From Mytilus californianus (taxonomy: Eukaryota): 64,000 nt of DNA. Position numbers and translations under genes: made by a program. The number at the start of each line of letters is the position of its first letter. The stretch's first letter is position 1. The notes beneath the pieces are model-generated. The model was not told the DNA's origin and ran no database searches. It was given only the letters and a program-made list of their open reading frames with translations. Where the stretch lies: NCBI RefSeq assembly GCF_021869535.1, contig NW_026262734.1:94426001-94490000 (forward strand), written 5' to 3'. This document shows positions 1,190 to 43,240 of this stretch, in pieces.

Positions 1190-2110
1190 CAATGGTTACC
1201 TTTGGTCACCCTTCATATATATTGAAACTGGTTACTTCCTAACGCCATACACGTGACAGATATTGTCTTTCGTTTGCTGTCGGCAGTTTACATAGATATA
1301 GATTTTGATTAAAGATTACATCTGGTCGCCATAGAGATTTATTGACTGGTGCCCTCTGGTCACCTTTCACATATATTAACTTTGGTTACCTCTGGTCACC
1401 TAACACAGATATTAACTTCGGTTATCTCTGGTCACCCTACTCATATATTGACTTAGGTTGCCTCTGGTCACCCTTCACATAAAATGACTTTATAACCTCT
1501 TTTCCTACTAAGTTATTGACCTGAGTTACCCCCGCACAATTATCAAACTTGTTAACTTGTAGGCAGTTCACACATATACAGATTTGGGTTACATTTGTCC
1601 CCTACAGATTTATGGACTGGTGCCCTCTGGTCACCCCTTCCCATTTATTGACTTTCTCTACATTTGGTCACCTTACATAGTAATTGACTTTTGTAACCTG
1701 TGGTCATCTTACACATATATTGATTTTAGTTAACTTTAGTCAGGTGACAAAGTTATGAACTTTGGCTAGCTCTGCGACATTTAAACAGATATATATTCTT
1801 TGATTAAATCTGGTCACCCTACGCATATTGTCTTAGTTAACATTCGCTTACCTTACAAATATATTGACTGGTTACATCTTGTCGCCCTTCACTGATAGTG
1901 ACTTTGGTTGACCTCTGGTCACCCTACATAGTTTCTGACTTACTCTGCTAACCCTACACATATGTTGATATTAATTACCTCATGTCATTCTGTAACTTGT
2001 AAACCTTTATTACCTCTTTGCAATTTAAACGGTTATAGACTTAAATAATATGGCACCTATTGTTTATATAATATTGACTGCGGCTACTTCTGGTCACCCT
2101 ACCCAAATAT
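1190..2110 (+). repeat. Degenerate 36-bp minisatellite array (core TGGTTACCTCTGGTCACC), forward orientation, upstream of the Ulp1 gene
   Basis: Recurrent ggttacctctggtcacc variants at ~36-bp spacing. Confidence 0.85.
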
Positions 2111-2183
2111 TGTGATCTTCTGTGCTAAACAAGATTGCACTTCTGTTTTCGTAGAATTCCAAAATTTAAAAGAAACTTAATTG

Positions 2184-5100
2184 ATGTCATTTGTTTCAGG
2201 TATTATTATTTGTATTACTTTGATTGTTAAAAATGATTATTTATTTAAAGCATTTTTTGAAACTATATGGGATTCATGGAAAGGAAATGCTGACGAAAAG
2301 TTTGGTACGGTGTATGGGAATGTTCTTTACGTATCGGATTTAATGAGCTTAAAAATTGAGGAGGAGTTGAATGATCAGGTAACAGTACTAATGGTTTAAT
2401 TTATGTAATAAAGGTTAAACGTTTTCAAAGATCTTGAACTCTCCTCTGAAACTACTGAACCAATTCCAACCAAACGTAAGCTTAATCATCCTTAGGGTAT
2501 CTAAAATAAAATTAAATCTGACATTGGTGAAAAGGTTCATTAGGTAAAGCATTTTCAGACAAATAAAACTACCCATTGTTTGGTTGATGCCACTAAATTG
2601 CTAATTTTTGTGACCCCTTAAAGAGTTACTGGCCTGTAAGTAATTGTGTTTTCTTTTATGCCAAGAAATATAGTCACTATGGCTTAATAGCATATTGGTT
2701 TAAAATGCATTGTTTTGCCATTGAAGAAAATATGACAGATACCAAAAAAAATTAAATACCAATTTGACAATGTAAGCACTACTTTATTTCCATTGAAAAG
2801 CAGAAATAATCATTGATGAAAGATTTAACAACAAAAAAAATGCAGGTAAGTCATTCAGGTTTTTGGAGGTCTTTTGATTTTATTTAGTTCTATAAAATGT
2901 ACAAGGATTTTTTTAAATAATCTGTCTTAAACTGATAACATAATCATGGTACTTTATGTTATGTGTTATCTTGATCAAACTTGTATGTCTTCACCTTTGT
3001 GATATTTAGTTTTGTTGATGGTTTCCTTTGTATCATACTGATTGAAAAGATCTGACCTTATCATTTTCTTTTTTTTTTCAGATAATTAATCTTTATTGTA
3101 GTGTACTGCAAAAACGGACGGATCAGTGTGTACAGGTAAACGAATTAAAAGTATTTATTTAATAACCGTTTTATCATATTTCAGTGCATTTATTTTAGAG
3201 TTGACTGATTTTTTCATCGGCTACTTTAAATCATGCTTTTTTTTTGTAACTTCCAGGATCAATTCATTTAATTTAGCTTTTTCTACATGATCCATTCCTC
3301 CATTAAGGGTATCTGAATTATCATTCTAAACTTGTTTTATGCATTTTTTATTCATTTCCAATTTCACCAAAGTAAACTGTGTATTGTAAAAGTTACTTTC
3401 GCACCCACCACCCTTTTTGCAGAGAATGAAATATTTGTTCCACTAAATCATCTTTTATTTTTTGCCTTTTATATAATTTAAGGTCTTTCTACCTTTCAGT
3501 TGAAAGACTTTTAGCTTTACTAAAGGATTATAATTATTATCATTATTTTGATATTATTATTTATATTTTGTTCGCCTTTTTTAAGTTGAGCTATTATTTT
3601 TAACAGATGTAGCTTTGACTTTGTTTTATATGATATCGTACAGCTTATGAGCTTTCGCCATTGCCCTAACGAAGACTTTTTACTCTCATTAATAGAGTTA
3701 CCTCCCCAATCTCGATTTTGCGTGTAGATACATCTACTGCGATATTTTATTAGTTTACTCAATTACTCGTTACACCCTTATGATGTCATATATTATTTAA
3801 CCGAAGCTATCTGGATATTCCTTATAAGAGTTATATCCCATTTGGAATTGTCGTTAAGGAAATATATGCACAACTCATTAACTATGAGGAAAATGAATTT
3901 ACTTTTATTCCTCGTATTTTTGATGGGTAATTTCATACTGACTTTGAAGAAGTATTGAACCAGGCAAGAAAAACCTTATATAATTTCACGTTCCGATGTA
4001 ATAGAAACAGTTAAATAAATCCAATGTTCTTGTCACACAATTTGTTTTATACATATTTCCGTTTTCCAGAAAGTGTCCCGTGCAGATTGTCTGATTCTGA
4101 CCTCAATTTTTGAAGGGAGGAAAAGCGTAACTTGGTTTAAAAAGGTATAATACTATATAATCATCTGTTATAAACTCTTTTTATATAAGTGCTTTTGATT
4201 TACACATAGATTACTCTTTTTACAGCTAAAAGCTGGATATTACCAATTCGCCTTTCACGTTTTAACAAAATAATAAGACATTCTAACATATTGATGATAT
4301 ATGTAAATTATCAAATGATAAATAATAAAACAATATGCTAAATATTGTATTGTGTATGGTATTATATTGCTGTTTATAAAATGTATTTAATGTTTCATCG
4401 GTCTTTTTTTTATCAGTTTGCAAGTTAATAATAACATTTTACAATACTTTTTTAGGACGATATACAACAGTATGACACTGTCATTGGGTGCATTAATGAC
4501 GGGAAGTGTCATTGGGTTGCTGTGGTAGGTTTATTTGCTCAATTAATGTTATTAATTACACTATTCAGGCATTTTTCCATGAGGTTATAAGTTAATAGAA
4601 AAATGAGTTGCAAGAACAGCATTTCAGACATTTCGTTGAGTTTTTAGTCATGTTAGTTGTTCTTCTATAACTTAATTCAACTTACTTGACTTAATATATA
4701 TATTTTCTCATACATTTTTCCAACTGATTTTGCACTCATTTATATGAAAGCATTTATACTGCATGGAAATGATAGTTAGAAAAGAAATATCAGATATAAA
4801 ATATTGGCTTCTTCGTATAAAATATTATCAAATATTTGCTTCTGAACATTGAGCAACAACCAGTAATTAAGCAAAATATTTATTTTTTTATAAATGTTAA
4901 TGTAAACAGATTTAAGTATGTGAAATTAAAAAGAGAGAATAATTTTTGTTTCAGGTTATGGATGTCCAACACCATATTGTGACAATTATGGACCCGCTCA
5001 AAATATCAAAGAAATTGAGAACATATGAAAAGAATTTCAAGTAAGATTGAAACTGTAGTTACATGACAGTCGTTTATTGCTTTAATGCATGTGATTTGTT

Positions 5101-8100
5101 TCAAAGTAAATTATTTCTGTGTTTGATATATATACTTAAAAAAAAGTTTATAATTCTGAAATTTTCAGAAGTGAGTCACAAGTTATAAGGACAAATCTAG
5201 AGAAATATAATTTGTTAATCTAAAATGAAAATTACTTCTGGTTGATACTGGAATTGAACTATAGTTGTATTATTGATTGCACAGCTTTGTAAATTGAATA
5301 TAGCAGTAAGAACTGAAGACCAGTTATTTTTTTCCAAACGTTGTTGATATCAACTTTAAAACAGCTGCAATTATTTTTTTTCCTACATTAGAAAGGTTGG
5401 TCAAATGAACGGTTTTCTATGGAATGTGCAATATCTCCTTAAGTATCATACATCTAGCTAGACATGTAAGTTCTATGATACAGTCCGGGGTAAGGCAATG
5501 GCTGGCATTATGGCTATAGCCAGCTTGACTTTTTAATATATATCAATTTTAAGTAACACATTTTTCTTTTCATATTATATTATGTAGCTACTTCACTAAA
5601 AGCAGAGATCTTGGTACATGGACAATCTGTACAGCAGTTGGGTATCCTCTGCAAAATGATTTTAGCTCATGTGGTGTTTATTGTTTGAAGGTACATAAAA
5701 CATTGGGCTTTGCATGTATGAATTGAGAGTTAATAAATGAAAGTTCAATTGAAGCTTGAATCTTAAATCAATGATATATATATACTAATAAAGATCACAA
5801 TTTTGCACGCAAAAGACACCCTTGTTGATTTTGAAAAAAAGGCAGAATCGTACAAACAAGATGAACAAAATATTGTTGTAAGTTGTAAACAACTTGTTTC
5901 CCAAACCTGTTTATTTAAATATGTGTAAACAATAACTTGGAATATATATCATGTAAACTATTTCAGTAAAATCCGCAAAGCACAAAGGTTGTGTGAAATT
6001 TAACCAAATCTATGATTTGCATAAATTACTTTAAATGTAATGGAAAGAAAAACAAATAAATATGTGGTACTTTTAATTTACCTTTTGTAAAAAAAACATT
6101 TTTATATCATTATTAGGCCTACATGAATCATTTCAGTAATTTAAACATTCAGTTTTGAACAGGCCATAGAAAATTTACAAAACAATGTGTACATTTAAGA
6201 ATTATTTTTTTAGTTCCTCGACCGATACCTAAGTAAGACAGATACATCTTTGGAATTAAACGTCCAAGCTGAAAGATTCACAATTGGCAGTGAAATTGTT
6301 CAAGCTGTGCGTAAGTAATCAATAGAATAAAAGCATTTACTAATAGTACCGTATGTTATGTAAATACTTAATATCTTCTTGCTAGACAATAAGTGAATCT
6401 AATAAAAAGGGAATATGAATTTTAACATGTTCAATAATGTGTTTGAAATCCTTATCTTTGATGTTTATCTCAATTCATTGATGATTTGTTTTTAATTTTA
6501 TCTATTGTTTCTGACCAAATTTCTTTACGCTATAAATGATGTATTTATGTTTCTTTAATGTATTATTCATTATTGATATGTTATACTTAAAAATGTAGTT
6601 TGGAAATAATAGCTTAATAATTCCGGTTGTTTTCTGTAATAATTTTTCTCTTTTTTCTACAGCTCAAACTGTACTTATTTTTATGATATTCCATGTCTTA
6701 TATATGTATGATAATGTGTTGTTGTCAAATATTACGATCTTATTAATGGAAATATAAACATGGAAAGTAGATGTTTAAAAATCAACTAGTTTTTGTAGGT
6801 CTAATTAAGTTAGCCGATATATTTATGCGATTGTCTTCTTCATATAAACTGCCGCTGTCATCAATGAGCATCACCATCATAATTACCATCTACGGGAAGG
6901 AACGTAAAAAATAACATCAACCAAGTGTAAACATTTTCAATTTTATGACTTATTATCAGCTGCTGCAATTTGTGATTTGGAGCAGAAGAATGTTGTTCCT
7001 AATTCATGTTAACATCTGTTTCTATTTTACTATAGAAACAAAAGGTGCTGTTATGACATGCTTCTTGTGTGCTAAAGAACCAACTAACATGGTAAATATA
7101 CATTTATAGATCGTTGATGTTCAACTTAACAGGGTGCTTTATTATTTTTATTGCTTATTTAAATACGTTTTATGGTTAAAATTGATAATTTTTTAACAGA
7201 ACCTTGTGATATTGTAGGTTAGAATATAAATGTTTTTTTTTATATCAATTTGATGAACTTTCACTAATATTAACATTTTTCGCAATAACTACATTAATTC
7301 ATAGAATTTGAACATGTCTATTAAATATTGCAGAGAGCATGTTCATGCTGTAAAAGGAATTTCCACAAAAAGTGTATGACTCCAGGACTATGCAGTCTGT
7401 GCTCAATTTTTCCACCTGGTGAGTGCAATAGAAAATTCTACCATTTCTAATTTTGTTTAAAGTAATACAATGAAATAGAATTTAATTTGCAAGGACAAAA
7501 TGCGATATAACAAAATTGTAGAATGATCATTGTTCTTCCATTTGTTCAATAATTCTATAAGTTGCGTTTAATTTCATAACAGAAGTCGACTTATTAATTT
7601 TTGTAGATATATTCATGTTGATATTTCTTACATTTTTTATAGATTGCACTAAATGAACTTATTCTAAGATATCTTTGAAATCCAAAGATGTGTTGTTCTC
7701 ACATTCAGACTCACATGGTAAAGGCAGACGTTTAATGTTCCCCCTCATGACTTAGTTGATTAATACAGAATGACGCTGGCATAGGTACCGTTTGCTTAGT
7801 GCACACTACTTTTTAAGTCTTCTTTAAATATTGTCTTTTCAAATGATTTTGTTATATAACTTGTCAGTTTCTTGTTTGCATTGTATAAGCTGTTGGATTT
7901 TATTTATTTTTTTGTTTCTTATATACAGATGTATGGTAATGTATAAAATACTGTGAACTTTTAGTTTGGTGTGCTTTATCCTAAATCTGTATGCTTCAAA
8001 TATAATCAATGTGTAGTCAATATGCCACTACTTTTACATATTATAGTTCTCACTTAATGTTCTGCTTGACACAATAATTACAATTTTCCAAGTTCACGTT

Positions 8101-11100
8101 AAGCTATTAATTTTTTTATGTTTCACCCACACTTATTTAAAAGCACTAAATGGTTCGTGTTGTTCAAGGTAATCTATACTTGACAGAGAGGTTACCCTTT
8201 TTTTATATTGCAATTTAATAATTTGAGTATATATTTTTACTCTGAATTGTACTGACTTTAAAAATATTAACCTTTAGTTTCTCTTCATGGATTTTGTTTA
8301 TTCTTTTTTTTAGAAAAAGTTAGACATTCAAAGAGAGGAAAAAAAGAACAACAACAGGTTTGATATCTATAATTGGTTCATCAAGACTACAGATGATTGT
8401 TGCATAACATTTTAAATGTTTTTTCATTGAAAACACTTTACCATCGAATTTTCTTCCTGATCATCTAAAAAAAATGAACGAACTTGCAAAAATTGTCAAG
8501 AACATTCACAATTAAAAATCGGGTCAATTTATGCTTGTTCTCACTTGATACTTCTGAATAAATCAATTGATTTCCTTATACAATTATTATATTTTTATCT
8601 TCTTTTTTCAGAAGTCCATAGAAATTTTAGATGAGAATGGTATGTATGCATTTAATTTGTTGATTAAATCAATTAATATGATGGATAATACCTTATGCAG
8701 ATTTCAGATTTTGTTAACTCTGATCAACTAATGCAAATATTGAATTTGGTTACCTCTGGTTATCTTATGCAAAAAAGTATTGTATTACCTCTGGTCAACC
8801 TATGCAATTATTGGATTTGATTACCTCTGTTAGTTTATGCAAATAGCGGCTTTTGTTACATCTGGTCAACTTATGCTAAAATAGTATTCGGTTAACTCTG
8901 GTTACCTTCTGCAAATATTTGAATTGTTACCACTGGTCACCTTCCGCATATAGGATTTGGTTACATCTGGTCATCTTACGCATATATAGGATTTGGTTAC
9001 CTCTGTGTACCTTATGCAGATAATTGATTTGGTAACCTCTTGTCACCTAATGAAGATAACGGATTTGGTTACTTCAGGTCAACTTATGTAAATATTGGAA
9101 TACGTTCATCTAGTCACCTATGCTGATATTGGATTTGGTTACCTCTGGTCACCATATGTATTTATTGGATTTGCTAGCTCTTGTCACATAATGTAAATAT
9201 TAGGTTTTGTTACCTCTGCTCACCTTACCGCGATATTGCATCTGAATACTTGTGGTCACCTTGAGAGTGGTTTGTATGCATTTAATTTATTGTATTAAAC
9301 CTTTAATATGATAGATATGTACACAAAGTTCATATAATGCTGCAACTAATATTCTTTTTGAACTTAAAACTTGCAATCGTTTCTGGTAATGGCCACTTAG
9401 GCTTAGTTGAACAAATCATTTTTTGTTTCTTGATTACCTTACACAAATATTTAATTTTGATTACATGTGGTCATTTTTACCAGAAATTAGATCTGTTAAC
9501 CTCTGTTTGCCTTACTACAACGGGGTTACTTCTGGTCACCTTATTCATATATTGGATTTGGTGACCTCTGGTCACCTTATGTTAATAACGGGTTTGGTTA
9601 CCTCTGGTCACCTTATTCATATATTAGATTTGGTTATCTCTGGTCACCTTATGGAAATACTGGATTTGGTTACCTCTGGTCACCTAATGCAGATTTCGGA
9701 TTTGGTGACCTCTGGTCACCTTATGTTAATATTGGATTCGGTTACCTCTGGTCACCATATGCATATTTTAGATTTGGTTATCTCTGGTAATTAACATTTA
9801 CATACAACTAGTTGATGTTTTTCATTTCATTTGTAGAAAGTTTTAGACAATCAAAGAAAGACAAAAAAGAAGAAGAACAGGTTTGATATACATTATGGAT
9901 TCAACAAGAATATAGAATATTATTACATTAAGTTTAATATATTGATAAAACTTTACACAATGATCATTATCTTTCATGCTCATCTACAAACAAATTTAAG
10001 AAAAATCATTGATCTTTAAAACATTGCCAAGAACACTGACAGTTGATAATTAAATAAAATAAAACTGATCCTCATAAGACACTTTTGGATAAATAAAATT
10101 GAATTTACTAATACAATTATCATATGTTTATCTTCTTTTTTCAGAAGTCCTCAGAAAATGTAGATCAGAGTGGTATGTATGCATTTAATTTATTGTATCA
10201 AACCTTTAATATGATGAAAACATACACTATATTTATATAATGCTGCAACTATTATTCTTTTTGAACTTGAAACTTGCAATCGTTTCTGGTAAAATGGCCA
10301 CTTAGGCTCGATTGAACTAATCATTTTTTTTTTGTTTCTTGATTACCTTACACAAATATTTAAGTTGATATCATGTGGTCATCTTAGCCAGAAATGGGAT
10401 TTGTTAACTTCTGTTGGCCTTAATATGCTAGAATGGGGTAACTTCTAGTCACCTTATTCATATATTGGATTTGGTTACCTCTGGTCATCTTATGGAAATA
10501 TAGGATTTGGTGACCTCTGGTCACCTTATGTTAATATTGGATTTGGTTACCTCTGGTCACCTTATGCAGTTTTCAGATTTGGTTATCTCTGGTAAATAAC
10601 ATTTGCATACAACTAGTTGATGTTTTTCATATCATTTGTAGAAAATTTGAGACAATCAAAGAAAGACAAAAAAGAAGAAGAACAGGTTTGATATACATTA
10701 TGGATTCAACAAGAATATGTAATATTATTACATTAAGTTTAATGTACCGATAAAACTTTACACAATGATCATTATCTTTCATGATCATCTACAAACAAAT
10801 TTAAGAAAAATCATTGATCTTTCAAACATTGCCAAGAGCACGGACAGCTGATAGTTCAATAAAATAAAACTGATCCTCATAAGATACTTTTGGATAAATA
10901 AAATTGAATTTACTAATACAATTATCATATACTTATCTTCTTTTTTCAGAAGTCCTCAGAAAATGTAGATGAGAGTGGTATGTATGCATTTAATTCATTG
11001 TATCAAACTTTTAATATGATGGAAACATACACTATATTTATATAATGCTGCAACTATTATTCTTTTTGAACTTGAAACTTGCAATCGTTTCTGGTAAAAT

Positions 11101-24644: not shown

Positions 24645-24983
24645 GTAATGATTTATTAGACACATGACACGTATTATCTTAACTTAAAACATATTTGATC
24701 ATTTGCTTAAAAAATATAACCTACTTGAGACAACAAACAGACCTAGTCCAATGTAATAATTAGCCAATTTATCTGCTTGACAAAATCATCATTAGGAATA
24801 GGTATTTGTTATATTAAATTATATCCATTTGTTCACATCAGTATCTTTGCAAAACATTTCAAGAGCAAACTGTATATGTCCTACTTTTAAAGCATTTAAG
24901 CACCTATGTAACATATACAATTTTTGAACGAATATCTAGAAAAGGCAGTTTTTCAAAATCAGTATAATATTTCATTATTTTTT

Positions 24984-30900: not shown

Positions 30901-33900
30901 TAGCAAAGTCTTTGTCAATATTAAGATTTGGTTCAAGTTATCAGAGGTAACTGAAGTCCGGATAATGTGTTATTTTTCGATGACTGGATACGTAGAGACA
31001 AATATAAAAAAGAAGATGTGGTTCGATGACTGGATACGTAGAGACAAATATAAAAAAGAAGATATGGTATGATTACCAATGAGACAACTATCCACAAAAG
31101 ACCAAAAATGACACAAACATTAACAACTATAGGTCACCATACGGCCTTCATCAATGAGCCTGTTTCTTTGGATTTTTTAGAAGAACAAAGTAGTAAGTAC
31201 ATATTTTAAGTAAATCTTTTGATTATGTTTTGATACCTTTTATCCATTTTGTAACGTTGACATATATTCTTAATGTCAACTGGTGTCAGATAGTATCTTC
31301 TATCGTGCACATCAAAATGCCCTTGATCTCTAGCCCATTTCCATGCTTTGCACAATATTTCCATGGGTTTTTTCCCCTATTGATAATGAAATAAAATTAA
31401 ATTCGTGTCAATTACAATTAATTTCAAATTTAGTTAAAATCTTTTTGAGCTTAAGGATTTTTTCAAATCAACACAAAATATGTCGTTGTATCAATATATG
31501 TCATTGTAAAAATATATGTCTTCTAGAATATTTTATCATCAATGCTATTCAGCTTTAAACTGGTTTTTTCATTAAAATATTTCATACAAGCGTCCGATAT
31601 TTATGTAAATGCATTAAATGACTCTCTGGCAAGCCAATTTTATCCTAATCATTTTATTTTTGATTTATTTCAACCTATTCATTCATTATAATCTTTGCAA
31701 ATTATGAAAAAATGCGCCGGAAGACAAACACAGACATCGAAAAGAACAGAATGGTTGAGAAAATATTAAACTCCAATAATGTCAGCATACACAATTTTTA
31801 TTATCATTGTGTTTATAAGAGTGCCAGCAACTTATAATTGAAAAATAAGTCAATTCGTTATGAGCAATAAATTATATATAATACCGACGACATGAATACC
31901 TGATCAAGTAAAGCATCTATATAAAGCAGTAAGCTGTGATCTGGGCGTGATTGGTGTTTTTCCTCTTTTATCTGTAAACTGTGTCCATTGTGTTTTAGTT
32001 GTTGCCGAATTATTACTGCTTTTTTACTCAAATGGGTCAAAAATCTGTGTAAGAAGATATTAACATGCCCTTTAATGATTTTTTTTTACATGTACAACGT
32101 CACTGGTTAGTACTGTTTTGCCAAACGTATCATTATTATATTTATTACAACAGCTTGTAAGCAATATTTAAGATCTATCGGACTTGAAGAAAAGGATTAT
32201 TTTTTCTAAAAATATGTGTAAGGCTACTTCGAATAACTGCTATGGTTGTTGTGTTCTCCTTGTAAATTGATAACTTATCATCAAAATGATATATACCAAA
32301 TTCTATATAATTTGATACAGGGATTCTTTATATAATAATTTCAACCATGACAGGGTGTATTGACCCGCTCATCACATGAAATGTCAGGTAAACTAGCCAG
32401 AAACTCATGAATGGTGTATGCCCGGTGAATACCTGTTTAAATGTGTTTGGTTTAGTAATATGATAAATGCATTTAATTCCCACTCTCAAGACACGGACAA
32501 AAGGTTGCTTAACTACAACAAGGATGTTAGGATCAATAAATAATGATGTTCAAACGCTTAAAAGTTATAAATTAATTTATAGTTTTGCATCATAAAAGAA
32601 AAGTAAAAGAGATAAATGAATATTACATTAACATAACATACTGGAATGACACATATGCCTGACAATTATTTGCCCTGGTATTCAAAGGACCTGTTTTTTT
32701 TCCTCTTGGTTTATTACATCTAAAATAAACATGATAAAATTTAAACAAATATGCATCTTAACTTTATAGATAACCAAAGAGAAAAATGTTGTGCAATATT
32801 TCAGAAAATTCATAGTTCAATACGTTTAAAAGCTTTCGGAACTATCTGTTATTAAAGGCCATACTATAATTACTGTATAAACTATAACACAAAACGTATA
32901 TTATTGAAAAAAAGCAAGAGAATAACATACAACCAGAAGTCAAGATTATACAACTCATCTCTTTCAAAACTATACCAATATTATTTTCTGTCACAAATGT
33001 ATCTTTTAACTCAGCATTGTCTTGCAAAGTTGATATGCAAGATATGTAAATAGATTCTTTAAGAATGTTTACGATTGTTACTTAAGTTGTTCTCTTTTTC
33101 TATTTATTGTTTATTTGGAGAAAAACAAGAGTGAATTTATTTCAAGATAAAATTCCTTTATAGATTATCGACTTAGATGATTAAAGTTACCTTTCACACC
33201 TGTATTGCAATGTGGTTTTATTTGCTTTCCTGTGAATAAAATTCCCTGTGATTGTTATATCCATTAAATGCTTGGTTATGACGTCTTCGTTGTCCACTTC
33301 ATTTCTGTTGAATGATAAGCAAAAACTGAAGCCAAAGTCACAAATGCTAGCTGATAAAACACAACAATATGTTTCAGTGTAATAGTGTGACCAAAAATTC
33401 ATCCATATATTCAGAAACATTGGAAAGAGTTACACCATAGTATAATAGACTTAAATTGTCCCCCAAAAAATAGAGTTCTTAAAAATGATCCCTTTGTTAA
33501 TACAGTGATTTTTATATTTTGTAAGACTATTTGAAGTTCAGTAAAATTATTCTGAATAACAAACAGAGTTATTTTTCAATAATCTGAAGGTATATGTTTT
33601 GCTGTGATAGATATTTATTTTCTTTTAATTCTATTGAAACCATTAGGTCATAGGAAGAAGGTAGCATATAGAAATTAGTTGATTTCAAAACTATATATTT
33701 TCGATTAAAATAAAATTTCCCATACCTTAAACGTCTAACAATGCAATCAGTACCATTTTTCCGTTTTTTGATGAAGGTGGATCTCACAAACTCTACGAAT
33801 GGCATATCTAGGGTAAGAAAAGCATATGTATTGCTATGTAGTAACACTAGTTTACTTGTTATAAATTTAAAAACAAATGATGACATCGATGAAAAATACC

Positions 33901-36900
33901 AACAAACGACCTCTGCACAATAAAATTAACGGTACCAATTTTCTTGCACCAGATGCGCATTTCGACAATACATGTCTCTTCAGTGATGCTCGTTGCCAAA
34001 TTATTTGAAATCCAAAGCTTATATAAAAGATGAAGAGCTATAATCCAAAAGGTCCAAAAAGTATAGCCAAATCCGTGAAAGAAATCAGAGCTTTGCATGA
34101 GGGAGATACATTCCTTAATTTATAATAATTTCTAATATTTTGTAACAGCAAATTTTAATAACACAAAAAAATAGTTGCATATAATATATTTGAACGTTTC
34201 AACAGGCGCAAACCTGCACATTACACGTAAAACAGCAGTAAAACATTAAAAGAAAAGACGCACTATAAAAGCAAATAATGGAAAATGGCTTAACTCTGAC
34301 AAAACAATTAACGAGTTACAAAAAATACAATTATAAACACAGTATTAATACAATAATAAAACGCATTTGCAGTATAACATAGACGTTACAGTTAATAATA
34401 AAAAAGGAGGACACATGATACAACTATTGCGACAAAATGACGTTAGATAAACCACTTTAAATTTCGCATGTAAAGTCAAATTTAAGTATAATAATTTTGT
34501 CGTTGGAAGTACGGAGAAATGGAAATAAAATGTGTTTTAAATGCATTGTTGACTTTCGAAAAGCCTTCGATAAAGTCATGCTCATTGGTAGTATCTATAA
34601 ACTGCAACTTTATAATACAACTAATTATTTTTTATAGAATATTGACGTCTATGTATACTAATGGTAGGTTATGTATAAAAGTGGATGATAAAATGACTTT
34701 TACTTTTTATAATAAAATTGAGAATAAAAATGGGGAATGTGTCAAAGAGACAACAACCCGACCGTAGAAAAATACAACAGCAGAAGTTCACCAACAGGTC
34801 TTCAATGTAGCGAGAAATTCCTGCTAATTATAAGTTATTCAAATCATTTTAAAATCACTGATGATAAGTATGGCTAGTGAACATTTCCGAAGGAACAATA
34901 TTGTACCTTCAACATCATGTGTCATGTTATAGTTGCTGAGTTCTTCGTTGCACACATCAACAGGAATAAAAAGGTTATCATCATTTGTTGCATGCTTATC
35001 ATTCGTGTGGTGATCAAGTTTGCCACTGTCACCTAAAATTTGTTGTATAAACGTTACAATTAACAAAAAAACGTAATAATTTATAATTAATACTAGTTTA
35101 TCTGTTAAAATAAAGCTTTTTTGCATCTGAATGTATTTGCCAATTAGAAAAACTTTGCCTCTAATGCTGATTGATATCAATGCAGTAATTATGCAATCAA
35201 ATTATGTAAAGTAAACTTATATAAATATCACATTTACAATACTTCCTTTAATATTTTTCTTTTTCAAAAACAGTCTACAGTGAAAAAACGTAAAACGATT
35301 TAAGGTAGATCATTACTGAATTTTTTTCTCAGACATAATTTTCTTATACATAGCCACAATTTAGTAGAAAATCAAAAGAAAAAGGGTGAAAATAAATCTC
35401 GTTTTCTTGCGAAAAATGGAAATTTCATTATCATTCCTTTAAAGAAAATTCACCAAATAAGTTATCTTCCGTTAATTAGCTCAGTTGACAAATTGAATCA
35501 AACAAAGACTGATAGCCGGTTTTTACAATAACACTTATTTTTTCAATGATATAATGCACTTATTTACATTTATCAAACAAGAGTTTTAAAAATGAATAGC
35601 ATTTATGTCTCAAAATTTGCAGTTTTAAATAAAGAACTTTGTCGCTTGTGTGCTGCTATTTTACAATTCAAGATGGCGATATACAGATATATAGTGATGA
35701 TCTACCTAATTCAAAGATATAAGGCTTAAAAATGTGTTCCGTCTACGTAAGACTCATTAGGGTCGCTCCTATCGAAAATGTGAAAATGCCTAATGAAGAA
35801 CAAAGTTAAAGTAAACTTATTTCATTTCGTTTTGCCAAAAACAATTTGATAAAATATCAAATATATAAATATGGACATTTTACTGATTCTATGGTATTTA
35901 TCCCTTTCTGAGCACAATATTGATCAACATTTTACCAAACGTGGGTCATTTGATCGAAGTCCTTCCTTAGTCGAAATATAATAATGACGACAAATATTTT
36001 GCTTTCCTCTGAATTTTATATAATGACGTCATTGGAATAGGTGATCATGCCCGATGAAGTCAGACAAGAAGAGCATGACTTTTTGTAAATAATCTAAACA
36101 AATTATCAAATTTTATTGGAATCATTAGATTAACAGATTCCACAACTATATCTCGTGTTATAAGATATTTCCCAACTATCAACCGTAGACATTATTTTTT
36201 TAACATAGATTTACATATGCGTTACTTTAAACTATAACTGTAAAGGTATCTCTTTATGAGAGATAATCATAAATTATATAATTTCTATTATCAGTTACCT
36301 TTTGGCTGGAGTGACTGGTAGTGGTTTTCGAAAATGTGCCCAAGAAGAATAGGATTACCGGAAAAACCATCACAACCAGTTACCCAAAGGACACTATCCT
36401 CATTATTGGTACTGGGAGCACTGGTGACAATAATTATGTCTCTCTGTAGCATTCTGGACATTCCAATGACCACAACATGGTCTGCGTACTCTCCATTCTG
36501 TAACATCCTGTCACAGTAGTCCGGAAAATTGTCTTCAACGAAGTTTTCTAATAACACAATGCCTTGACTGCCCTATTGATTGAAAGAAAGCTACTTACAT
36601 AAGTCTTTATTAACTACTGTACATTGAAATTGATTAATACAAAACAAATACTTTTATAACTACATTTTATCAAAAATCATCATGATCATAACATACATTT
36701 TTTATTTATTTTATTGTTTTTTGTCAATACCTATTATTTAGCATTGTACTATATTAACTGTAAATGATTTATTTAAACATCTGCAGAAAAAAGCATTCTG
36801 GTTGATATGAAAGTCTTAACTGATGCTTATTCTTTTATCAGTTTGTAAATCTTTAAATATTAAATTGCATTAATCACAGGTATTACGGGCAGTTACGTCA

Positions 36901-39146
36901 ATTCCAAATTAATATTCTGTCGGAAGTAGTTTTGATGGTATTTGTGTGTTAATAGCTTCTTAACTGATTTAAATCATATATTTAAGTTGTGCTGATGCGC
37001 CACTAACGTTGCCAACGGTTCTGATTTGTCCCCTGAAAACATGTCCAACTAATTCTTTATGTTTCTGTCCATGGAGGAGTTTGATAATTAGTGAATGTAT
37101 TTAACAAGTTAATTAGTTTACCTCAAAACTAGGATGTGTTGATATGTAGTTTACAACATTTGTTCTTAATTGTTCGGGAGCAATAACGTCTGCGCCAATT
37201 CTATCTAGCTGGCATGTGATTGCTTCAAAAAAACAATTCCCATTCCCTGGTGTTTGACCTCTGTATTCTAAGCCATGGGATGAACAGTTCCTCTTAAGTC
37301 TCTCAACTATTAATGTTTGTTCCTCGTTTGAAGCTATGGATTGCTTTATAGCAATTTGTAGTTCATCAGGTGTTTGGAATGATTTCCCTTAATATTAGAA
37401 TATAAGGTTAAAATTTCTTCACTTCAAATTTACAGCTAAATGACATTGTTTATACATACTTATGTGTATTCAATTGTAATAAAACGTATCATTGAAAATA
37501 TTACTTGTTTATTCAGGGATCATTTGACAGATTTGTTAAGAGTGATATGATTCTGGGTAAACTCTGAATTTTACAATAAAATTTGAATTATGATTCTTTC
37601 ATTTCTTTGTGAGGTTGTTGACATTCACCTCTTTAGAATTATAAATTAACTTTTTCAGACCTTCTGCTCTGAAATATTTGTATCACAGAAGTCTGACATT
37701 TTTGGCTATTCATAAATTTATTCAAAAACAATATTTGACTTTGTTATTCATGATTATTGAAAGCTATGATAATATGCTGGTGGTTGACTGGTTTTGTGTA
37801 AATTATTTTGTTTTGAATTAAACAAATAAAATGAAGATACAGAGCCAAAAACATTCTAAAATTTGAATGATGGCAGCAGCTAGATGCATGTAATTGGTAT
37901 TGACATTTTGTTTTAGAAAATGTGTGTGTAGGTGTGTATGTGTGTTGGTGTGTTGGTGTGTGTATGTGTGTTGGTGTGTTGGTGTGTATGTGGGTGTGCT
38001 GGTATGTGTGTGTGGGGAGGTAAAAATTTGATATGAATCCTTTCTTTTTACTAATAAAGGGCATCATAAGAAAATTGAAATAAAACACTGATCAGTATTA
38101 AGTGAACTGCCAAAGTGTGTTATGTACACTAGTTTTTAGATAATAAACAAATGATAAAGTAAGGAATAAACCGCAAACCAATTCCGTGGAATGATGTTTG
38201 TCTTGTTCCCGATTTTGTGTTTATTGTCGTGGCTTTGTCAATTTGGTTATGACAAGTGGATTTGATTAAGTGCCTTTTGAATTTTCTGTTTTTCAGTTTC
38301 CAATTTGCGTGCCAACAGATATATTCAACTACAAAAGTCTACAGTATTAACATAAAAATAACACTACTGTGTTATAAATGTATATCTATAATATAATACA
38401 GATAAAGAAATAAATCACCTGATGCTAAGCATATCTTTTCTTTCATCTCATTTGCTTTTTCTGTTAAGGTTTGTGCGTGGCGAAGAATATACTGTTTTGA
38501 ATTTGTATCACATGCTAAAATGGTAGGGAAATATAATATTTGTGCGTGTAATTTCCTAGAATAAATCATATTTTTTCAATTTGCATATGTACACAAAAAA
38601 ACAAAAACAGTAACAATTTTCGATTTGTTGGAATAAGATACTAATTTTGAAACACTTTTAAAAAAAATATATACGCAGTCGCTGAGCCATTACAAATTGG
38701 CCAAGGATAATTGATCGTAGCTGAATAAAGTTTTAAAAAATGAAGAGCATATTATCCATGCCATCGGTCGTTGTAAAATATTTAGCATAAAAGGTCAATC
38801 CGTGGTAAAATCAGTATAAATTCAAGCCTAAATGAATTATTTCTCAATTGTATGATCTAAACAGCGTAATCTATACAATACTGTATGAAAAATATCACGA
38901 CATTTGTGGCGGTTTGGGCATAAATGAGAAAACACAATTCATACCCAATTCTCTGGCTTTTTTCTCCAAAGAGGTTGCCTCAATATATATGGCTTCAATC
39001 TGTTTTTTAACTTCTTCCTTTTCTTCATGTCGCAATTCATGGAGGTCTTCCAAATTAAAGTTTTCCAAACCTGTAAGATATGGAAATGGCGGAATAAATA
39101 ACGATGTTTCAAATATACACCGCGATAATGTATCATAATTTGACAT
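24984..39146 (-). CDS. OTU-domain-fused MULE transposase (UIM-like, OTU, WRKY/GCM1-like Zn, DDE, SWIM, SWIM-like), 19 exons, ~1,084 aa if two 1-nt lesions are corrected
   Basis: Exons (minus): 39146-38945, 38514-38419, 37387-37122, 36572-36299, 35032-34907, 33807-33726, 33304-33191, 32719-32642, 32044-31900, 31376-31237, 30197-30111, 29604-29504, 29394-29220, 28522-28426, 28090-27980, 27313-27144, 26628-26527, 26319-26093, 25646-25189 (or to 24984 with one A fewer in an A9 run). All intron phases match. All introns are GT-AG except the acceptor at 30198-30199, which reads AT. Motifs: PGNGNCFFEA...HYQS (OTU); YRCERC...C...HNGH; FLDATYK, FMVDRD, CWFH, TNNLVE (MULE); CNC-x8-CKH (SWIM). The ATG at 39146 may be preceded by an unseen upstream exon. 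Confidence 0.88.
25189..26319 (-). CDS. Tandem SWIM and SWIM-like Zn fingers, C-terminal exons of the transposase
   Basis: YNVDIVNEVCNCPAATTRGMCKH spans the 26093/25646 junction. It is followed by VVNLTSFKCTCFANSHGKHCVC. Confidence 0.85.
27144..29604 (-). CDS. MULE transposase DDE catalytic core exons
   Basis: VVFLDATYKGLTAYGYSFYALVARDEQQGRGTPLSYCI (D at 29517-29519); SFMVDRDTKEISAINEVFPNSSVLLCWFHVLQA (D at 28507-28509, CxxH); NW...WANYGR...DTNNLVER (E at 27146-27148). Confidence 0.93.
30595..30960 (-). repeat. Degenerate 36-bp minisatellite, reverse orientation, in a transposase intron
   Basis: gtgaccaaagtt, gtggtaaccaaag, ggtgaccaaagttaac and taaccagaggttaccaaag are reverse-complement variants of the core. 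Confidence 0.6.
31900..33304 (-). CDS. WRKY/GCM1 (FAR1-like) Zn DNA-binding domain exons of the transposase
   Basis: Exons 33304-33191, 32719-32642 and 32044-31900 splice to QYRCERCNKPRGKKTGPLNTRANNCQAYVSFQFLTHLSKKAVIIRQQLKHNGH. This is the C..C..H..H pattern typical upstream of MULE catalytic domains. Confidence 0.7.
33895..34170 (-). mobile_element. Short hammerhead-bearing interspersed repeat (retrozyme or PLE pLTR derivative) inserted in a transposase intron
   Basis: An ~280-bp segment around the ribozyme, unrelated to the flanking exon or minisatellite sequence. Boundaries are approximate. Confidence 0.5.
33946..33989 (-). ncRNA. Minimal type I hammerhead ribozyme (Penelope/retrozyme-type), intact core
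   Basis: Minus strand reads gcatca CTGAAGA gac atgtatt gtc GAA ATGCGCAT C tggtgc. It has a CUGANGA core, 3-bp stem II, GAAA, palindromic stem III (AUGCGCAU), AUC cleavage triplet and a 6-bp stem I (gcatca/tggtgc). Confidence 0.8.
35300..35709. mobile_element. MITE with short TIRs (Kolobok-like, TTAA context) in a transposase intron
   Basis: ttaaggtagatcat at 35300-35313 and atgatctacctaa at 35697-35709 are reverse complements apart from one base. Confidence 0.5.
36299..37387 (-). CDS. OTU-like cysteine protease (deubiquitinase) domain exons of the transposase gene, preceded by a UIM-like motif
   Basis: Exon 37387-37122 encodes KSFQTPDELQIAIKQSIASNEEQ...GQTPGNGNCFFEAITCQL...EQLRTNVVNYI (Cys codon 37233-37235). 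Exon 36572-36299 encodes ...DRMLQNGEYADHVVV...LLGHIFENHYQSL (His codon 36321-36323). The junction is phase 0. Confidence 0.88.
37920..38013. repeat. Compound (TG)n/(TGTTGGTG)n microsatellite
   Basis: Visible TG-rich low-complexity tract. Confidence 0.9.
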
Positions 39147-39759
39147 TCCTTAACTATAATTTTGGAATTTGTGCAGTTTTTCTAGTTTTTGAAGTATTTG
39201 ATTTGTACTATCAACCCTACGTTTCGAATTCTGATTTTAGGAATTGAATATTGGTCTTAATATGACCTCTACTATGATTAATGAAATAATTATGTTTGAA
39301 ACTGTAACCATTACCTTCAAAATCGCCTGTTACACCTGTCATATTTCCTCTATTTAATTCACGAACAAAAAACCCTGTAATGAGAATGTGAAATATATCA
39401 TATTTATTTTTAAAATGTCAACAAAATCTTTTTTTTTATTAATTGTATATAACCGGAGAAACCATGAGACCCCTTAAAAGTCATATAATTATATATAGGA
39501 TGAACAGATTTAACCAAAATGAATTGCAGTTCAGGGTAATAAGAGGTTGCCTAAGACATTATTTGCGTCAGATTACCAAAAGTAAATAAATTATAGGATG
39601 GGTATCCAGAGATATCCATAATCATTATCTGTTTATGATGAGCAATATTCATATTCAATATAAATGTTGCGGGAAGTGTTAACCAAATTTAACATCTGGA
39701 TAGTGTGAAACGAGATAATCGATGCCAATAAAGATTCATTAATTATGAATTGTGACCAG

Positions 39760-42700
39760 AACCTAAAGTTAATACCTGTGTATGGTGACCAAAGGTAACC
39801 ACATTCCAAATCTGTAAAGGGTGACCAGAGGTAATTTAAGTAAATATATGTATACGATGACCGGAGGTAATCTCATTCAATAATATGAAAGGGTTACCCA
39901 ATTCGAAATCTGTGTAGGGGGGCCAGAGGTAAACATATTTAATATCTGTGTAGAATGACCTGAGTTAACCACATTCAATACCATATTCAAAGTTTTGGTT
40001 GGGTGACCAGAGGTCACCCTATTCAATATCTTTGTAGGGTGACCAGAGGTAACCATATTCAATATCTTTGGAGGGTGACCAGAGGTAACCATATTTAAAG
40101 TTTTGGTTGGGTGACCAGAAGTAACCTTGTTCAATATATGTGTAGGGTGACCAGAGGTAACCATATTCAAAGTTTTGGTTGGGTGACCAGAGGTAACCTT
40201 ATTCAATATCTGTGTAGGGTGACCAGAGGTAACCATATTCAAAGTTTTGGTTGGGTGACCAGAGGTCACCCTATTCAATATCTTTGTAGGGTGACCAGAG
40301 GTAACCATATTCAATATCTTTGGAGGGTGACCAGAGGTAACCACATTCATCATCTTGGCAGTGTGACCAGAGATTACCAAAATAAACAGCTTACTAGTAG
40401 ATTTAATAAAGGTATCTACATTCAATATTTATGTATGGTGTCTAAAGATAAATAACTTTATATCTGTGTATGGCGACCCGAGGTTACCACATTCAAAAAA
40501 GGCAATTGCTATATATATATATGTGTGTGTTGACAATGGCAACATAATTCAATGTATGTGTACAGCGACCAGAAGTTGCTATATTAATTATAAAAGAAGC
40601 GCAAAAGTGTGAACCGGGATAACAGATGCTAACCAAATACATTATTTATGAATTGTAACCATAGGTAACATAAGCCAATTTATTGTAGGTTGACCAGAGG
40701 TTACCATGTTCAATATCTGTGAAGAGTAACAAGAGATAACCATACTCAATATTTTGTAGGGTGACCAGAAGTAACCACATTCAATATCTTTTTAGATGAC
40801 AAAAAAAAACCATATCCAATATCTTTGTTAGGTGACCAGAGGTAACCATATTCAAAGTTTTGGTAAGGTGACCAGAGGTTACCATGTTCAAAATATGTGT
40901 AGGGTGACCAGAGGTAACCATAGTCAATATATGTGTAGGGAGACCAGAGGTTACCACATATAATATCTTTTTAGGTGACCAAAGATAACCATATGCAATA
41001 TCTTTGTAAAGTGACCAGAGGTAACCTTATTCAATATTTGTGTAGGGTGACCAGAGGTAACCATATTTAAAGTTCTGGTTGGGTGACCAGAAGTAACCTT
41101 ATTCAATATATGTGTAGGGTGACCAGAGGTAACCATATTCAAAGTTTTGGTTGGGTGACCAGAGGTAACCTTATTCAATATCTGTGTAGGGTGACCAGAG
41201 GTTACCATATTCAAAGTTTTGGTTGGGTGACCAGAGGTCACCCTATTCAATATCTTAGTAGGGTGACCAGAGGTAACCATATTCAAAGTTTTGGTTTATT
41301 GAACAGAAATAACCTTATTCAATATATGTGTAGGGTGACCAGAGGTAACCATATTCAAAGTTTTGGTTGGGTGACCAGAGGTAACCATATTCAATATCTT
41401 TGGAGGGTGACCAGAGGTAACCACATTCATCATCTTGGCAGTGTGACCAGAGATTACCAAAATAAACAGCTTACTAGTAGGTTTAATAAAGGTATCTACA
41501 TTCAATATTTAAGTATGGTGTCTAAAGATAAATAACTTTATATCTGTGTATGGCGACCCGAGGTTACCACATTCAAAAAAGGCAATTGCTATATATATAT
41601 GTGTGTGTTGACAATGGCAATATAATTCAATGTATGTGTACAGCGACCAGAAGTTGCTATATTAATTATAAAAGTAGCGCAAAAGTGTGAACCGGGATAA
41701 CAGATGCTAACCAAATTCATTATTTATGAATTGTAACCATAGGTAATATAAGCCAATTTATTGTAGGTTGACCAGAGGTAACCATTTTCAATATCTGTAA
41801 TTGTTTACCAGAGGTTACCTTTTTCAATATTTGTGTACGTTGATCAGAGGTTACCACGTTCAATTTATGACCGAAGTTTACAAAATTAAATATTTAAGTA
41901 GGCTAACTATAGGTAACCAAATTAAATATTTATGCACGGTGACTAGAGGTAATCAAGTTTTCTATCTGTGTAAGATAAGAGGTAACCACATTCAAAATAT
42001 GTGAAGGGTGACCAGAGGTAACCCAATTCAGTATTTGTGTAGGGTAATTTGAGGTATTTAAAGTTCATATATGTATAGGGTGACCAGAGGTCACCAAATT
42101 CAATATTTTAGTAATTTATGTATGATTAATCATATTAAAACTCTTGCACAGTCATCAGTACATTTTCATTATTACCGGACTTAAGAAAGAACTCACACGA
42201 TGGGAGCGTTCAAGACATGATTAAGAAGATTCCTGTTGTTCCTTACTTTTTTAATGTTGTTGTAAATTTCTTTTGATATATCTGTTTACTCCTTGGTTTT
42301 GATTGTATTTGTCTTAGTAGGGTGACCAGAGATTACCAAAATCAAGACATATTTAGGGTAACAAGAGGTAGTTAAAGCCAGTATATAGGTTTTGAAACCG
42401 AACATAACTCAATTAAAAGTATTTGAAAGATGTCCAGATATAACCGTGATCATTATCTGTGTAGGATGGCAAGTTTATAACTAATTCAAACATCTGTGTT
42501 GGGTGACCAGAGGTTTCCATATTCAGTATATGTGAAGGGTGACCAGAGGTAACCATATGCAATATCTTTGTAAAATGACTAGAGGTAACCTGATTCAATA
42601 TATGTGTAGGGTGACCAGAAAGAACCATATTCAAAATTTTGGTAGGGTGACCAGAGGTCACCATATTCAATATCTTTGTAGGGTGCCCAGAGGTAACCAT

Positions 42701-43240
42701 ATTCAACATCATTGTAGAGTGATTAGGGTTAACCATATACAACATCTTGGTAGGGTGTCCATATATTACCAAATTAAACATCTAAGTAGGGTTATTAAAG
42801 TTAAATAAATTCAATAGTTATGCACAGTGTCTAAAGATAAAAAATAGAATATATGTGTAGGGTGACCAGAGGTCACCACAATTAATTATGTAAAAGGTGA
42901 CAAGGTGCAACAAAATTCAATATCTGTGAAGGCTTGCCGGGTTGACAAGAGGTAACCAAATTCAATATCTTATAATGTTTATTGCAATTCAATACATGTG
43001 TTGGGTGACCAGAGGTCACCACAATTAATTATGTAAAAGGTGACAAGATGTATAGAAATTCAATATCTGTTTAAGGGCCATTCAATATCTATATCTGTGT
43101 CAATTAATTAGAAGAACCACTGTAAATTTATCTGCAAAGGAAGTAAGGTTAATAAAGTTACTATGCATTTTGTATCAAATGACCAGTGTAACTATATGCA
43201 CTATTATTTTCTGTATAGGGTGACCAGAGGTAACCAATGG
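39760..43240 (-). repeat. Long 36-bp minisatellite array, reverse orientation, upstream of the transposase gene; includes an internal direct duplication with 1,080-bp offset
   Basis: Many gggtgaccagaggtaaccatattcaa units. The block aataaacagcttactagtag occurs at 40381 and 41461. Confidence 0.92.

What the first reader, a model, noticed from the sequence alone, without database searches (positions are those of the whole stretch)
1190..43240. 36-bp GGTTACC-TCT-GGTCACC minisatellite is mirror-symmetric about the convergence point and follows transcription direction
All copies from 1.2 to 21.5 kb (upstream of and inside the Ulp1 gene) are forward. All copies from 30.6 to 43.2 kb (inside and upstream of the transposase gene) are reverse. 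Each unit holds two GGTNACC near-palindromes 10 bp apart, about one helical turn. Inference: these are subterminal transposase-binding or promoter arrays forming complex TIRs, as in foldback/Phantom-type MULEs, and have also been seeded into introns.
Basis: partly seen in the sequence, partly recalled or inferred. Interest (0 to 1): 0.7.

Follow-up and report, generated by a model that had tools for sequence, protein, structure and literature searches.

The report
Mirrored repeat arrays of giant mussel transposon
The 36-bp repeat is real and points inward from both ends of a very young 47-kb Mutator-type jumping gene of the California mussel. Its core also sits inside the element's terminal inverted repeats, so it is most likely the docking site for the transposase, a known design seen here at unusual scale.

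Summary
Observation confirmed. The core GGTTACCTCTGGTCACC (3 mismatches or fewer) occurs 80 times on + (1.2-21.5 kb), 56 times on - (30.6-43.7 kb) and nowhere else in the window. A profile search finds about 195 units and no full-length exception. Three other copies obey the same rule.

The window holds one copy (46,895 bp, C154:94422800-94469694) of a MULE family:
- 16 paired copies of 9.4-50 kb, 98-100% identical.
- Perfect 42-bp TIRs.
- A 9-bp target duplication in the one copy where both flanks fit.

The TIR itself carries the unit (17 of 19 bases, same polarity). The "mirror" is therefore TIR symmetry, and agreement with transcription direction follows from the two convergent genes.

Two distant relatives in other assemblies also have mirrored subterminal arrays, with unrelated 59- and 77-bp units. 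Muta1 gives experimental precedent: its transposase binds such repeats.

The promoter reading is not supported. Spliced RNA-like contigs place the left outer array in an intron of the Ulp1-like gene. The 8.3-21.5 kb block is an 803-bp higher-order repeat whose copy number varies between copies (9, 4, 3, 2).

About 88% of exact cores lie outside this family, in sister families with other spacers. The scan had already met this family on other DNA (s1-282028).

Verdict: a new variant of a known kind.

The parts
1194..2112 (+). Left outer array, about 15 units of 36 bp, all forward. It includes two units (1348, 1619) whose core GGTGCCCTCTGGTCACC is one change from the TIR core.
   Evidence: It lies in an intron of the + strand gene.
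8690..21491 (+). Higher-order repeat zone. 803-bp blocks (9538-17590, 9 blocks, 90-96% identical) plus diverged blocks, holding about 110 forward units in all.
   Evidence: Block number is 9 in the window and 4, 3 and 2 in copies A, B and C.
30613..30909 (-). Degenerate remnant of about 5 units, reverse, in an intron of the transposase gene. Present in all four copies.
39490..43235 (-). Right arm arrays: a dense 36-bp array (39766-41458) and looser outer arrays (41538-43235), about 65 reverse units.
   Evidence: Length differs among copies, 70 to 103 units.
43653..43694 (-). Right terminal inverted repeat, 42 bp, a perfect reverse complement of the left TIR. The left TIR lies outside the window at C154:94422800-94422841, that is window -3200 to -3159. 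It contains the core variant GGTGCCCACTGGTCACC pointing inward.
2246..5690 (+). Ulp1-like (Peptidase_C48-like) gene. Spliced exons are 2246-2374, 3078-3132, 4067-4142, 4454-4523, 4954-5040 and 5588-5690, all introns GT..AG on +. The next exon starts near 6210 and an upstream exon lies near window -1700.
   Evidence: Pfam PF02902 is only weak for exon 5553-5723 (E 0.19). The LND, HW and SCG motifs were seen by eye.
24962..32757 (-). MULE transposase gene, at least 10 exons mapped with relatives P0078 and P0053. The window copy has one extra T at 25234 that shifts the frame of the last exon (179 against 247 codons open).
36294..37388 (-). Two exons with OTU cysteine-protease similarity, upstream of the transposase exons on the same strand.
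   Evidence: PF02338, E 3.5e-4 and 0.043, both below Pfam's cut-off when taken exon by exon

Best explanation
The 36-bp units are the cis-acting subterminal repeats of a giant, very young Mutator-like (MULE) DNA transposon of Mytilus californianus. The outermost unit is part of each 42-bp TIR. Further copies of the same motif, two GGTNACC palindromes one helical turn apart, are stacked inside each arm and always point inward. Transposase molecules, presumably through the N-terminal zinc-finger domain, would bind these sites cooperatively, mark the ends and help to bring them together for cut-and-paste excision, as shown for Muta1. The mirror symmetry is the symmetry of the TIRs. Tandem duplication and unequal exchange then multiplied the units on each arm without ever inverting them. 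On the left arm this produced a 13-kb higher-order repeat, and stray copies ended up in introns. These deep copies are probably by-products, not working sites. The two genes (Ulp1-like on +, OTU-transposase on -) read inward from the two ends, so unit polarity and transcription direction coincide. Shown: the anatomy, the TIR-unit identity, the multi-copy mobile family, the conserved architecture in relatives, and array length polymorphism. Inferred: transposase binding and its effect on excision.
For: (1) Perfect 42-bp TIRs bound the element, and 16 paired copies of 9.4-50 kb are 98-100% identical. Copy B has a 9-bp target duplication, ACGTTTATC. (2) The left TIR and the 7 bases just inside it match the unit at 17 of 19 positions in the same polarity, with 0 of 2000 shuffles as good. 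The TIR core variant occurs 61 times in 1.65 Gb, all inside this family, and intermediate variants sit in the left outer array. (3) No unit lies in 20 kb (window) or about 17.7 kb (copy B) of flanking host DNA, and all four copies obey the rule. (4) Distant transposase relatives (about 33% identity) in two other assemblies have mirrored arrays with unrelated units. L035 is 13.4 kb with a long TIR, 59-bp arrays of 21 and 12 units and a 9-bp TSD. L034 has 77-bp arrays of 18 and 13 units around the transposase and a convergent Peptidase_C48 gene. (5) Array consensus sequences within the element, and sister families genome-wide, keep the 17-bp core but differ in the spacer. (6) Deletion derivatives keep the arrays, for example the 14.5-kb C13 copy and the 9.4-kb C132 copy. 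(7) Precedent: Muta1 transposase binds its subterminal repeats, more repeats give stronger binding and more excision, and a GGT..ACC-type palindrome at the terminus matters (PMC5499845).
Against: There are no binding data. Inside arrays the core is no better conserved than the spacer once units are picked by a spacer anchor. The arrays are not contiguous with the TIR: 418 bp separate them on the right and 4.4 kb on the left. Most units lie 11-25 kb from the left end, too deep to be plausible end-recognition sites. A target duplication was found in only one copy; copy A has none, and one guessed form of the window's duplication was not found at its left end. The N-terminal DNA-binding domain is only weakly recognisable (ZSWIM3_N, E 0.086).
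Confidence: 0.7

Rival explanations
1. Passive satellite. The 36-mer is a tandem repeat that merely expands inside these elements by slippage or unequal exchange and has no role in transposition. Its orientation is frozen by descent.
For: Array length and 803-bp block number vary freely among copies only about 1% diverged. Within arrays the core is no more conserved than the spacer. Most units lie far from the ends. TE-borne repeats that expand into satellites are well known (bioRxiv 10.1101/2024.12.02.626372).
Against: The unit is part of the TIR itself. The 17-bp core is invariant across arrays and sister families while the spacers differ. Unrelated arrays sit in the same mirrored position in distant relatives. 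Derivatives that lost the genes keep the arrays.
Confidence: 0.17
2. Promoter or enhancer arrays. The units are transcription-factor sites that drive the two convergent genes, which would explain why polarity matches transcription.
For: The dense right array lies upstream of the OTU and transposase exons. Polarity is co-directional with both genes.
Against: The left outer array is intronic: an exon near window -1700 is spliced to 2246. The 13-kb repeat zone lies downstream of the Ulp1-like catalytic exons. The array at 1201-2200 is almost uncovered in RNA-like contigs and no molecule starts were seen there. The right arm was not examined with reads.
Confidence: 0.08
3. Independent genome-wide minisatellite that colonised this element by chance, with no family link.
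For: There are 4,448 exact cores genome-wide, of which only about 500 can belong to the 17 copies.
Against: Outside copies occur as conserved single dimers or short arrays typical of TE copies, with family-specific spacers. At C1:68.488 Mb and C121:12.528 Mb they start 150-300 bp from a terminus about 80% identical to this family's right end, in the expected orientation. There are none in the host flanks of four copies.
Confidence: 0.05

Closest known systems
Muta1 (Aedes aegypti), a type 2 foldback MULE
   Same: MULE transposase, 8-9 bp TSD, and a terminal imperfect palindrome of GGT..ACC type (GGGTCTACCC). Same-polarity subterminal tandem repeats on both ends, which bind transposase and raise excision (PMC5499845).
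   Different: Muta1 is 3.2 kb with nine 12-bp repeats packed into a 145-bp TIR. Here the element is 42-50 kb with 36-bp units, about 200 of them. They lie 0.4-25 kb from the ends in non-homologous arms, partly as an 803-bp higher-order repeat, and partly inside introns.
Rehavkus elements (Repbase; arthropods, annelids)
   Same: MULE-related, 9-bp TSD, long inverted termini with variable numbers of subterminal tandem repeats or a minisatellite before the TIR. Their repeats can expand into satellites (PMC6446971; bioRxiv 10.1101/2024.12.02.626372).
   Different: Rehavkus transposases carry a PHD finger. None was found in the mussel exons or in relatives P0078 and P0053, which instead hit MULE and ZSWIM1-3 RNaseH-like models. 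Rehavkus is not reported with Ulp1 or OTU genes or at this size.
Foldback elements (FB, Galileo, Tetris) and the subterminal repeats of Ac/Ds and En/Spm
   Same: Repeated short motifs inside both ends, oriented symmetrically, thought or shown to be transposase-binding sites.
   Different: They belong to other superfamilies (P, hAT, CACTA). This comparison rests on my own knowledge and on the Tribolium preprint's discussion; it was not tested here.
Ulp1-carrying MULEs of plants (KI-MULE / CUMULE type)
   Same: A MULE that carries a Peptidase_C48 (Ulp1-like) gene beside the transposase. Relative L034 also has a convergent C48 gene.
   Different: Those are plant lineages and their Ulp1 genes were captured independently. 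No homology between the C48 genes could be shown here. Own knowledge.

Membership tests
MULE / Mutator superfamily | DDE transposase with the MULE domain (PF10551) | tested here: met
   Window exon 28189-28566 hits PF10551 at 26.5 bits, just under the 27.6 cut-off because only a third of the domain lies in that exon. Full-length relatives P0078 and P0053, collinear with 10 window exons, score 52 and 60 bits.
MULE / Mutator superfamily | Target site duplication of 8-11 bp, typically 9 | tested here: inconclusive
   Copy B has ACGTTTATC on both sides, and relative L035 has GCTTTTTAC. Copy A has no duplication. One guessed form of the window's duplication was not found at its left end, and the left flank could not be read.
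MULE / Mutator superfamily | Terminal inverted repeats | tested here: met
   A perfect 42-bp TIR occurs 29 times exactly in the genome, always as inward-facing pairs.
Foldback-type (type 2) MULE, Muta1-like | The TIR is built of a terminal motif plus same-polarity subterminal tandem repeats on both ends | tested here: inconclusive
   One unit lies in each TIR and same-polarity arrays lie on both arms. The arrays are separated from the TIR by 0.4 kb and 4.4 kb of unrelated sequence, so the arms are not a long TIR. Relative L035 does have a long TIR with arrays.
Foldback-type (type 2) MULE, Muta1-like | Transposase binds the subterminal repeats, and repeat number raises excision | not testable with these tools
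   Needs EMSA and excision assays.
Rehavkus | PHD finger in the transposase | tested here: not met
   No PHD model hit in P0078, P0053 or the window exons, even at E up to 10. A Cys-rich ORF at 7325-7447 (+) lies in the other gene and gives only a weak C1_1 hit.
Rehavkus | Minisatellite or tandem repeats next to the TIR, with a 9-bp TSD | tested here: met
   No phylogeny with named reference transposases was possible, because the protein library carries no names. The Pfam signal points to the ZSWIM1-3 type instead.

The most novel reading that the evidence does not exclude
The very large number of same-polarity binding units (about 200 per copy, including a 13-kb higher-order repeat) is not a by-product. 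It is what lets a cut-and-paste transposase synapse and move 42-50 kb of DNA, by coating both arms with transposase. The conserved core (GGTCACC, reverse complement GGTGACC, which contains the TGAC of a W-box) would be the recognition site of the transposase's WRKY/GCM1-type finger, shared by several sister families that cross-mobilise each other.
Probability: 0.15. Interest if true: 0.6.

Novelty: new variant of a known kind. Interest (0 to 1): 0.42.

Why it matters
Cut-and-paste transposons above about 10-20 kb are rare, and how their ends are recognised and paired is unknown. This family offers 16 near-identical natural variants that differ mainly in array length and internal deletions. It also has a simple, testable candidate binding site. 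It is a ready system for asking whether subterminal repeat number sets the size limit and activity of giant DNA transposons. It is also a clear case of a TE-borne repeat growing into satellite-like higher-order arrays in a bivalve genome. For annotation, these arrays mark element arms and should not be read as host regulatory or coding repeats.

Tried and rejected
1. Long-TIR idea. After masking the units, blastn finds no inverted homology between the arms except a 112-bp piece (17911-18020 against 31048-31159). That piece also matches 57600-57710 outside the element, so it is an unrelated short repeat.
2. Core better conserved than spacer inside arrays. The first impression came from selecting units by their core. 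With a spacer anchor the two are equal. Only the between-array and between-family comparison favours the core.
3. Window TSD. One guessed form, taken from the right flank, was not found beside the left TIR.
4. Homology of the Ulp1-like gene with the C48 gene of relative L034: none at E 1e-3.
5. More relatives. P0002, P0004 and P0055 sit on contigs too short to judge. L038 and L039 show one array each (32 bp, about 15 or more copies; 30 bp x 31) but no mirrored partner within 10 kb, and both are gene fragments.
6. Raw RNA reads of run X21 gave almost nothing on 1-6000. Only short high-copy pieces matched.
Full report
OBSERVATION

The pattern GGTTACC-N(0-6)-GGTCACC has 36 exact matches in the window against none in 100 shuffles. 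Sixteen are on the + strand between 1194 and 20747 and twenty on the - strand between 39784 and 43235. Allowing three mismatches in the 17-bp core gives 80 + hits (1194-21460) and 56 - hits (30614-43653). There are none in 22-30 kb or 44-64 kb.

A profile HMM built from the units finds 125 + and 70 - units. The only hits on the wrong strand are three 10-14 bp fragments inside the right array, which the palindromic GGTNACC half-sites explain. TRF confirms the 36-bp period.

Three things need adding.
- The 8.3-21.5 kb block is an 803-bp higher-order tandem repeat. It has nine blocks at 90-96% identity between 9538 and 17590, each with about four full units, and diverged blocks on both sides.
- Once the units are masked, the two arms share no other inverted sequence.
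- Units within an array descend from each other, so the unit count greatly overstates the number of independent orientation events.

WHAT IT IS

The genome has 1,651,950,171 bases in 175 records. That equals the published Mytilus californianus primary assembly minus 16,730 bp, about the size of the mitochondrial scaffold (176 scaffolds, 1,651,966,901 bp; PMC9710001).

Comparison with three other copies fetched from the genome shows 98-99% identity. It runs from beyond the window's left edge to window 43694 and then stops abruptly.

The ends are a perfect 42-bp terminal inverted repeat, CACAAGGATAATAGTTACGCTGAACGGTGCCCACTGGTCACC. It occurs exactly 29 times in the genome, always as inward-facing pairs. 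The window's copy is C154:94422800-94469694, 46,895 bp, which is window -3200 to 43694.

Sixteen copies have both ends. Their sizes are 9.4, 14.5, 24.8, 25.2, 28.8, 29.7, 33.8, 42.3, 44.7, 44.7, 45.4, 45.6, 46.9, 49.0, 49.4 and 50.0 kb. A seventeenth lacks its left end.

Copy B is flanked by a 9-bp duplication, ACGTTTATC. Copy A is not, and one guessed form of the window's own duplication was not found at its left end.

GENES

On the - strand, at least ten exons between 32757 and 24962 are collinear with full-length relatives P0078 and P0053. Both relatives carry the Pfam MULE and ZSWIM1-3 RNaseH-like domains. Two further exons at 36294-36572 and 37116-37388 resemble OTU proteases.

Thirteen copies keep the last transposase exon at 96-98% protein identity. 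The window's copy has one extra T at 25234 that shifts its frame.

On the + strand, contigs of two RNA-like runs, from two organism labels, join 2246-2374, 3078-3132, 4067-4142, 4454-4523, 4954-5040 and 5588-5690 through GT..AG introns. An upstream exon maps to about window -1700 in copy A and a following exon lies near 6210. Three of these exons (2246-2374, 4454-4523, 5588-5690) carry the motifs of a Ulp1-type protease. Taken exon by exon, Pfam gives only E 0.19. I did not build or search a joined spliced model.

WHY THE REPEAT IS MIRRORED

The left TIR and the 7 bases just inside it read CCACTGGTCACCCTATAAA against the unit's CCTCTGGTCACCCTACAAA. That is 17 of 19 in the same polarity, and none of 2000 shuffles did as well.

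The TIR form of the core, GGTGCCCACTGGTCACC, occurs with one mismatch or fewer only 61 times in 1.65 Gb. All are in this family: 32 are exact, all at the TIRs. Nearly all the one-mismatch hits are the intermediate form GGTGCCCTCTGGTCACC in the left outer array.

The outermost unit is therefore part of each TIR. All inner units repeat it in the same inward polarity. The mirror is TIR symmetry, preserved because tandem duplication does not invert. The two genes read inward from the ends, so unit polarity and transcription direction coincide without any further rule.

The same layout holds in copies A, B and C. No unit occurs in about 17.7 kb (copy B) or 20 kb (window) of host flank.

INDEPENDENT SUPPORT FROM RELATIVES

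Two transposases only about 33% identical in the last exon lie in other public assemblies.
- L035 (GCA_024679245.1) is a 13.4-kb element. It has a 9-bp duplication, GCTTTTTAC, and a long TIR that contains 59-bp arrays of 21 and 12 units in mirror orientation.
- L034 (GCA_023375975.1) has 77-bp arrays of 18 and 13 units. They mirror each other around the transposase gene and a convergent gene with a weak Peptidase_C48 hit.

The units are unrelated to the mussel's, so the architecture is conserved and the sequence is not. Two further long-contig relatives show a single array near a gene fragment and are uninformative.

CORE VERSUS SPACER

Inside arrays the core is no better conserved than the spacer once units are chosen by a spacer anchor. 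My first impression was a selection artefact.

Between arrays the picture differs. The consensus core is the same in all arrays, apart from a T/G choice at position 4. The 19-bp spacer differs between the left outer array, the higher-order zone and the right arm.

Genome-wide, exact core-N19-core dimers number 240 and fall into families by spacer. The right-arm spacers are confined to this family's copies. A TAACACATATATTCACTTT type and a T[CT]ACACAGATATTGGCTTT type are scattered on many other records.

The core is exact 4,448 times in the genome. The four copies in hand hold 23-36 each, so about 88% lie elsewhere. At C1:68.488 Mb and C121:12.528 Mb such units begin 150-300 bp from a terminus about 80% identical to this family's right end, in the expected orientation.

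ARRAY DYNAMICS AND DERIVATIVES

The number of 803-bp blocks is 9, 4, 3 and 2 in the window and copies A, B and C. Right-arm units number 70, 103, 74 and 70. The copies differ by only about 1% elsewhere, so the arrays change fast.

The 14.5-kb derivative on C13 keeps more than 3 kb of right array. The 9.4-kb derivative on C132 keeps the left arm through at least window 2003 and at most 4.2 kb of the right arm.

MECHANISM AND RIVALS

Muta1 of Aedes aegypti is a MULE whose 145-bp TIR consists of a palindromic terminal motif, GGGTCTACCC, and nine 12-bp subterminal repeats. Its transposase binds them. Binding and excision rise with repeat number, and cleavage needs at least one repeat (PMC5499845). 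Rehavkus elements and other foldback transposons carry similar repeats, which can expand into satellites (PMC6446971; bioRxiv 10.1101/2024.12.02.626372).

I therefore read the mussel units as transposase-binding subterminal repeats (confidence 0.7). The deep left-arm repeat zone and the intronic remnant would be by-products of array expansion.

The rivals, in order of weight:
- A purely passive satellite (0.17) is weakened by the TIR identity, the invariant core across families and the conserved position in relatives.
- The promoter reading (0.08) is weakened on the left arm, where the array is intronic and almost uncovered by RNA-like contigs. The right arm was not examined with reads.
- An unrelated genome-wide minisatellite (0.05) does not fit the flanks, the termini or the spacer families.

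COMPARISON AND NOVELTY

By transposase domain and TIR this is a MULE. The TSD fits where it could be read.

It works like a foldback-type MULE but departs from Muta1 and Rehavkus in several ways:
- Size: 42-50 kb, against 1.4-10 kb for arthropod MULEs (PMC13359780) and about 7 kb for full-length plant elements (PMC6431247).
- A TIR of only 42 bp, with arrays set 0.4 and 4.4 kb inside non-homologous arms.
- An 803-bp higher-order repeat.
- No PHD finger.

I rate it a new variant of a known kind.

LIMITS

There are no binding or excision data. The reads tool was used once, on window 1-6000 only. The organism names of the relatives' assemblies and of the coded runs are not given by the tools.

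Noticed in passing
window 25234: The window's transposase copy has one extra T in the last exon compared with copies A, B and C. This shortens the open frame from 247 to 179 codons, so this copy is probably not autonomous.
   Followed up: yes
window 5-466: A repeat of about 460 bp is nested in the element's left arm. Dozens of copies 75-82% identical occur elsewhere in the genome, and depth is very high in run X6. It is probably a separate short TE fixed in the family's ancestor. Copy C's homology starts only at window 492.
   Followed up: partly
window 33695-43694: Near-identical 31-mers of this stretch are held by sequencing runs of four different organism labels, with shares of 0.83, 0.74, 0.47 and 0.38. 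The family, or a very close relative, is therefore present in several species. This could mean recent common ancestry or horizontal transfer.
   Followed up: no
L001 9418-9482 and L006 (copy A, C2:15236149-15280832): Copy A has intact TIRs but no matching target duplication (GAGATATAT against GAATGTTTA). Possible causes are recombination between copies or a mis-join of the assembly across a 45-kb repeat.
   Followed up: no
window 7325-7447 (+) and 6951-7085 (+): Cys/His-rich ORFs (CxxC ... CxCC-x4-H-x2-C ... CxxC) lie downstream of the Ulp1-like exons, with a weak C1_1 hit. This may be a zinc finger at the C-terminus of the + strand gene.
   Followed up: no
window 22440-22805, 23183-23401, 24473-24664 (+): Open frames that look coding lie between the repeat zone and the transposase 3' end. 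They have no Pfam hit. Whether they belong to the Ulp1-like gene, which would make the 13-kb repeat zone intronic, is unresolved.
   Followed up: no
window 43863-44321: A 192-bp tandem repeat (2.4 copies) lies just outside the element's right end. An (AG)40 microsatellite lies at 45498-45577.
   Followed up: no
window 46707-47348 (-): Host ORFs with weak NHL-repeat or beta-propeller similarity lie about 3 kb beyond the element's right end.
   Followed up: no
L034 13849-14323 and L035 15606-16321: Both distant relatives also carry a third, internal minisatellite (35 bp x 13 and 39 bp x 19) that differs from their terminal arrays. This recalls the internal repeat zone of the mussel element.
   Followed up: no
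copy C (L017, about 40380 and 45024 of the joined 60 kb): Copy C carries two insertions relative to the window, of about 0.4 kb and 1.3 kb, within the transposase upstream region.
   Followed up: no
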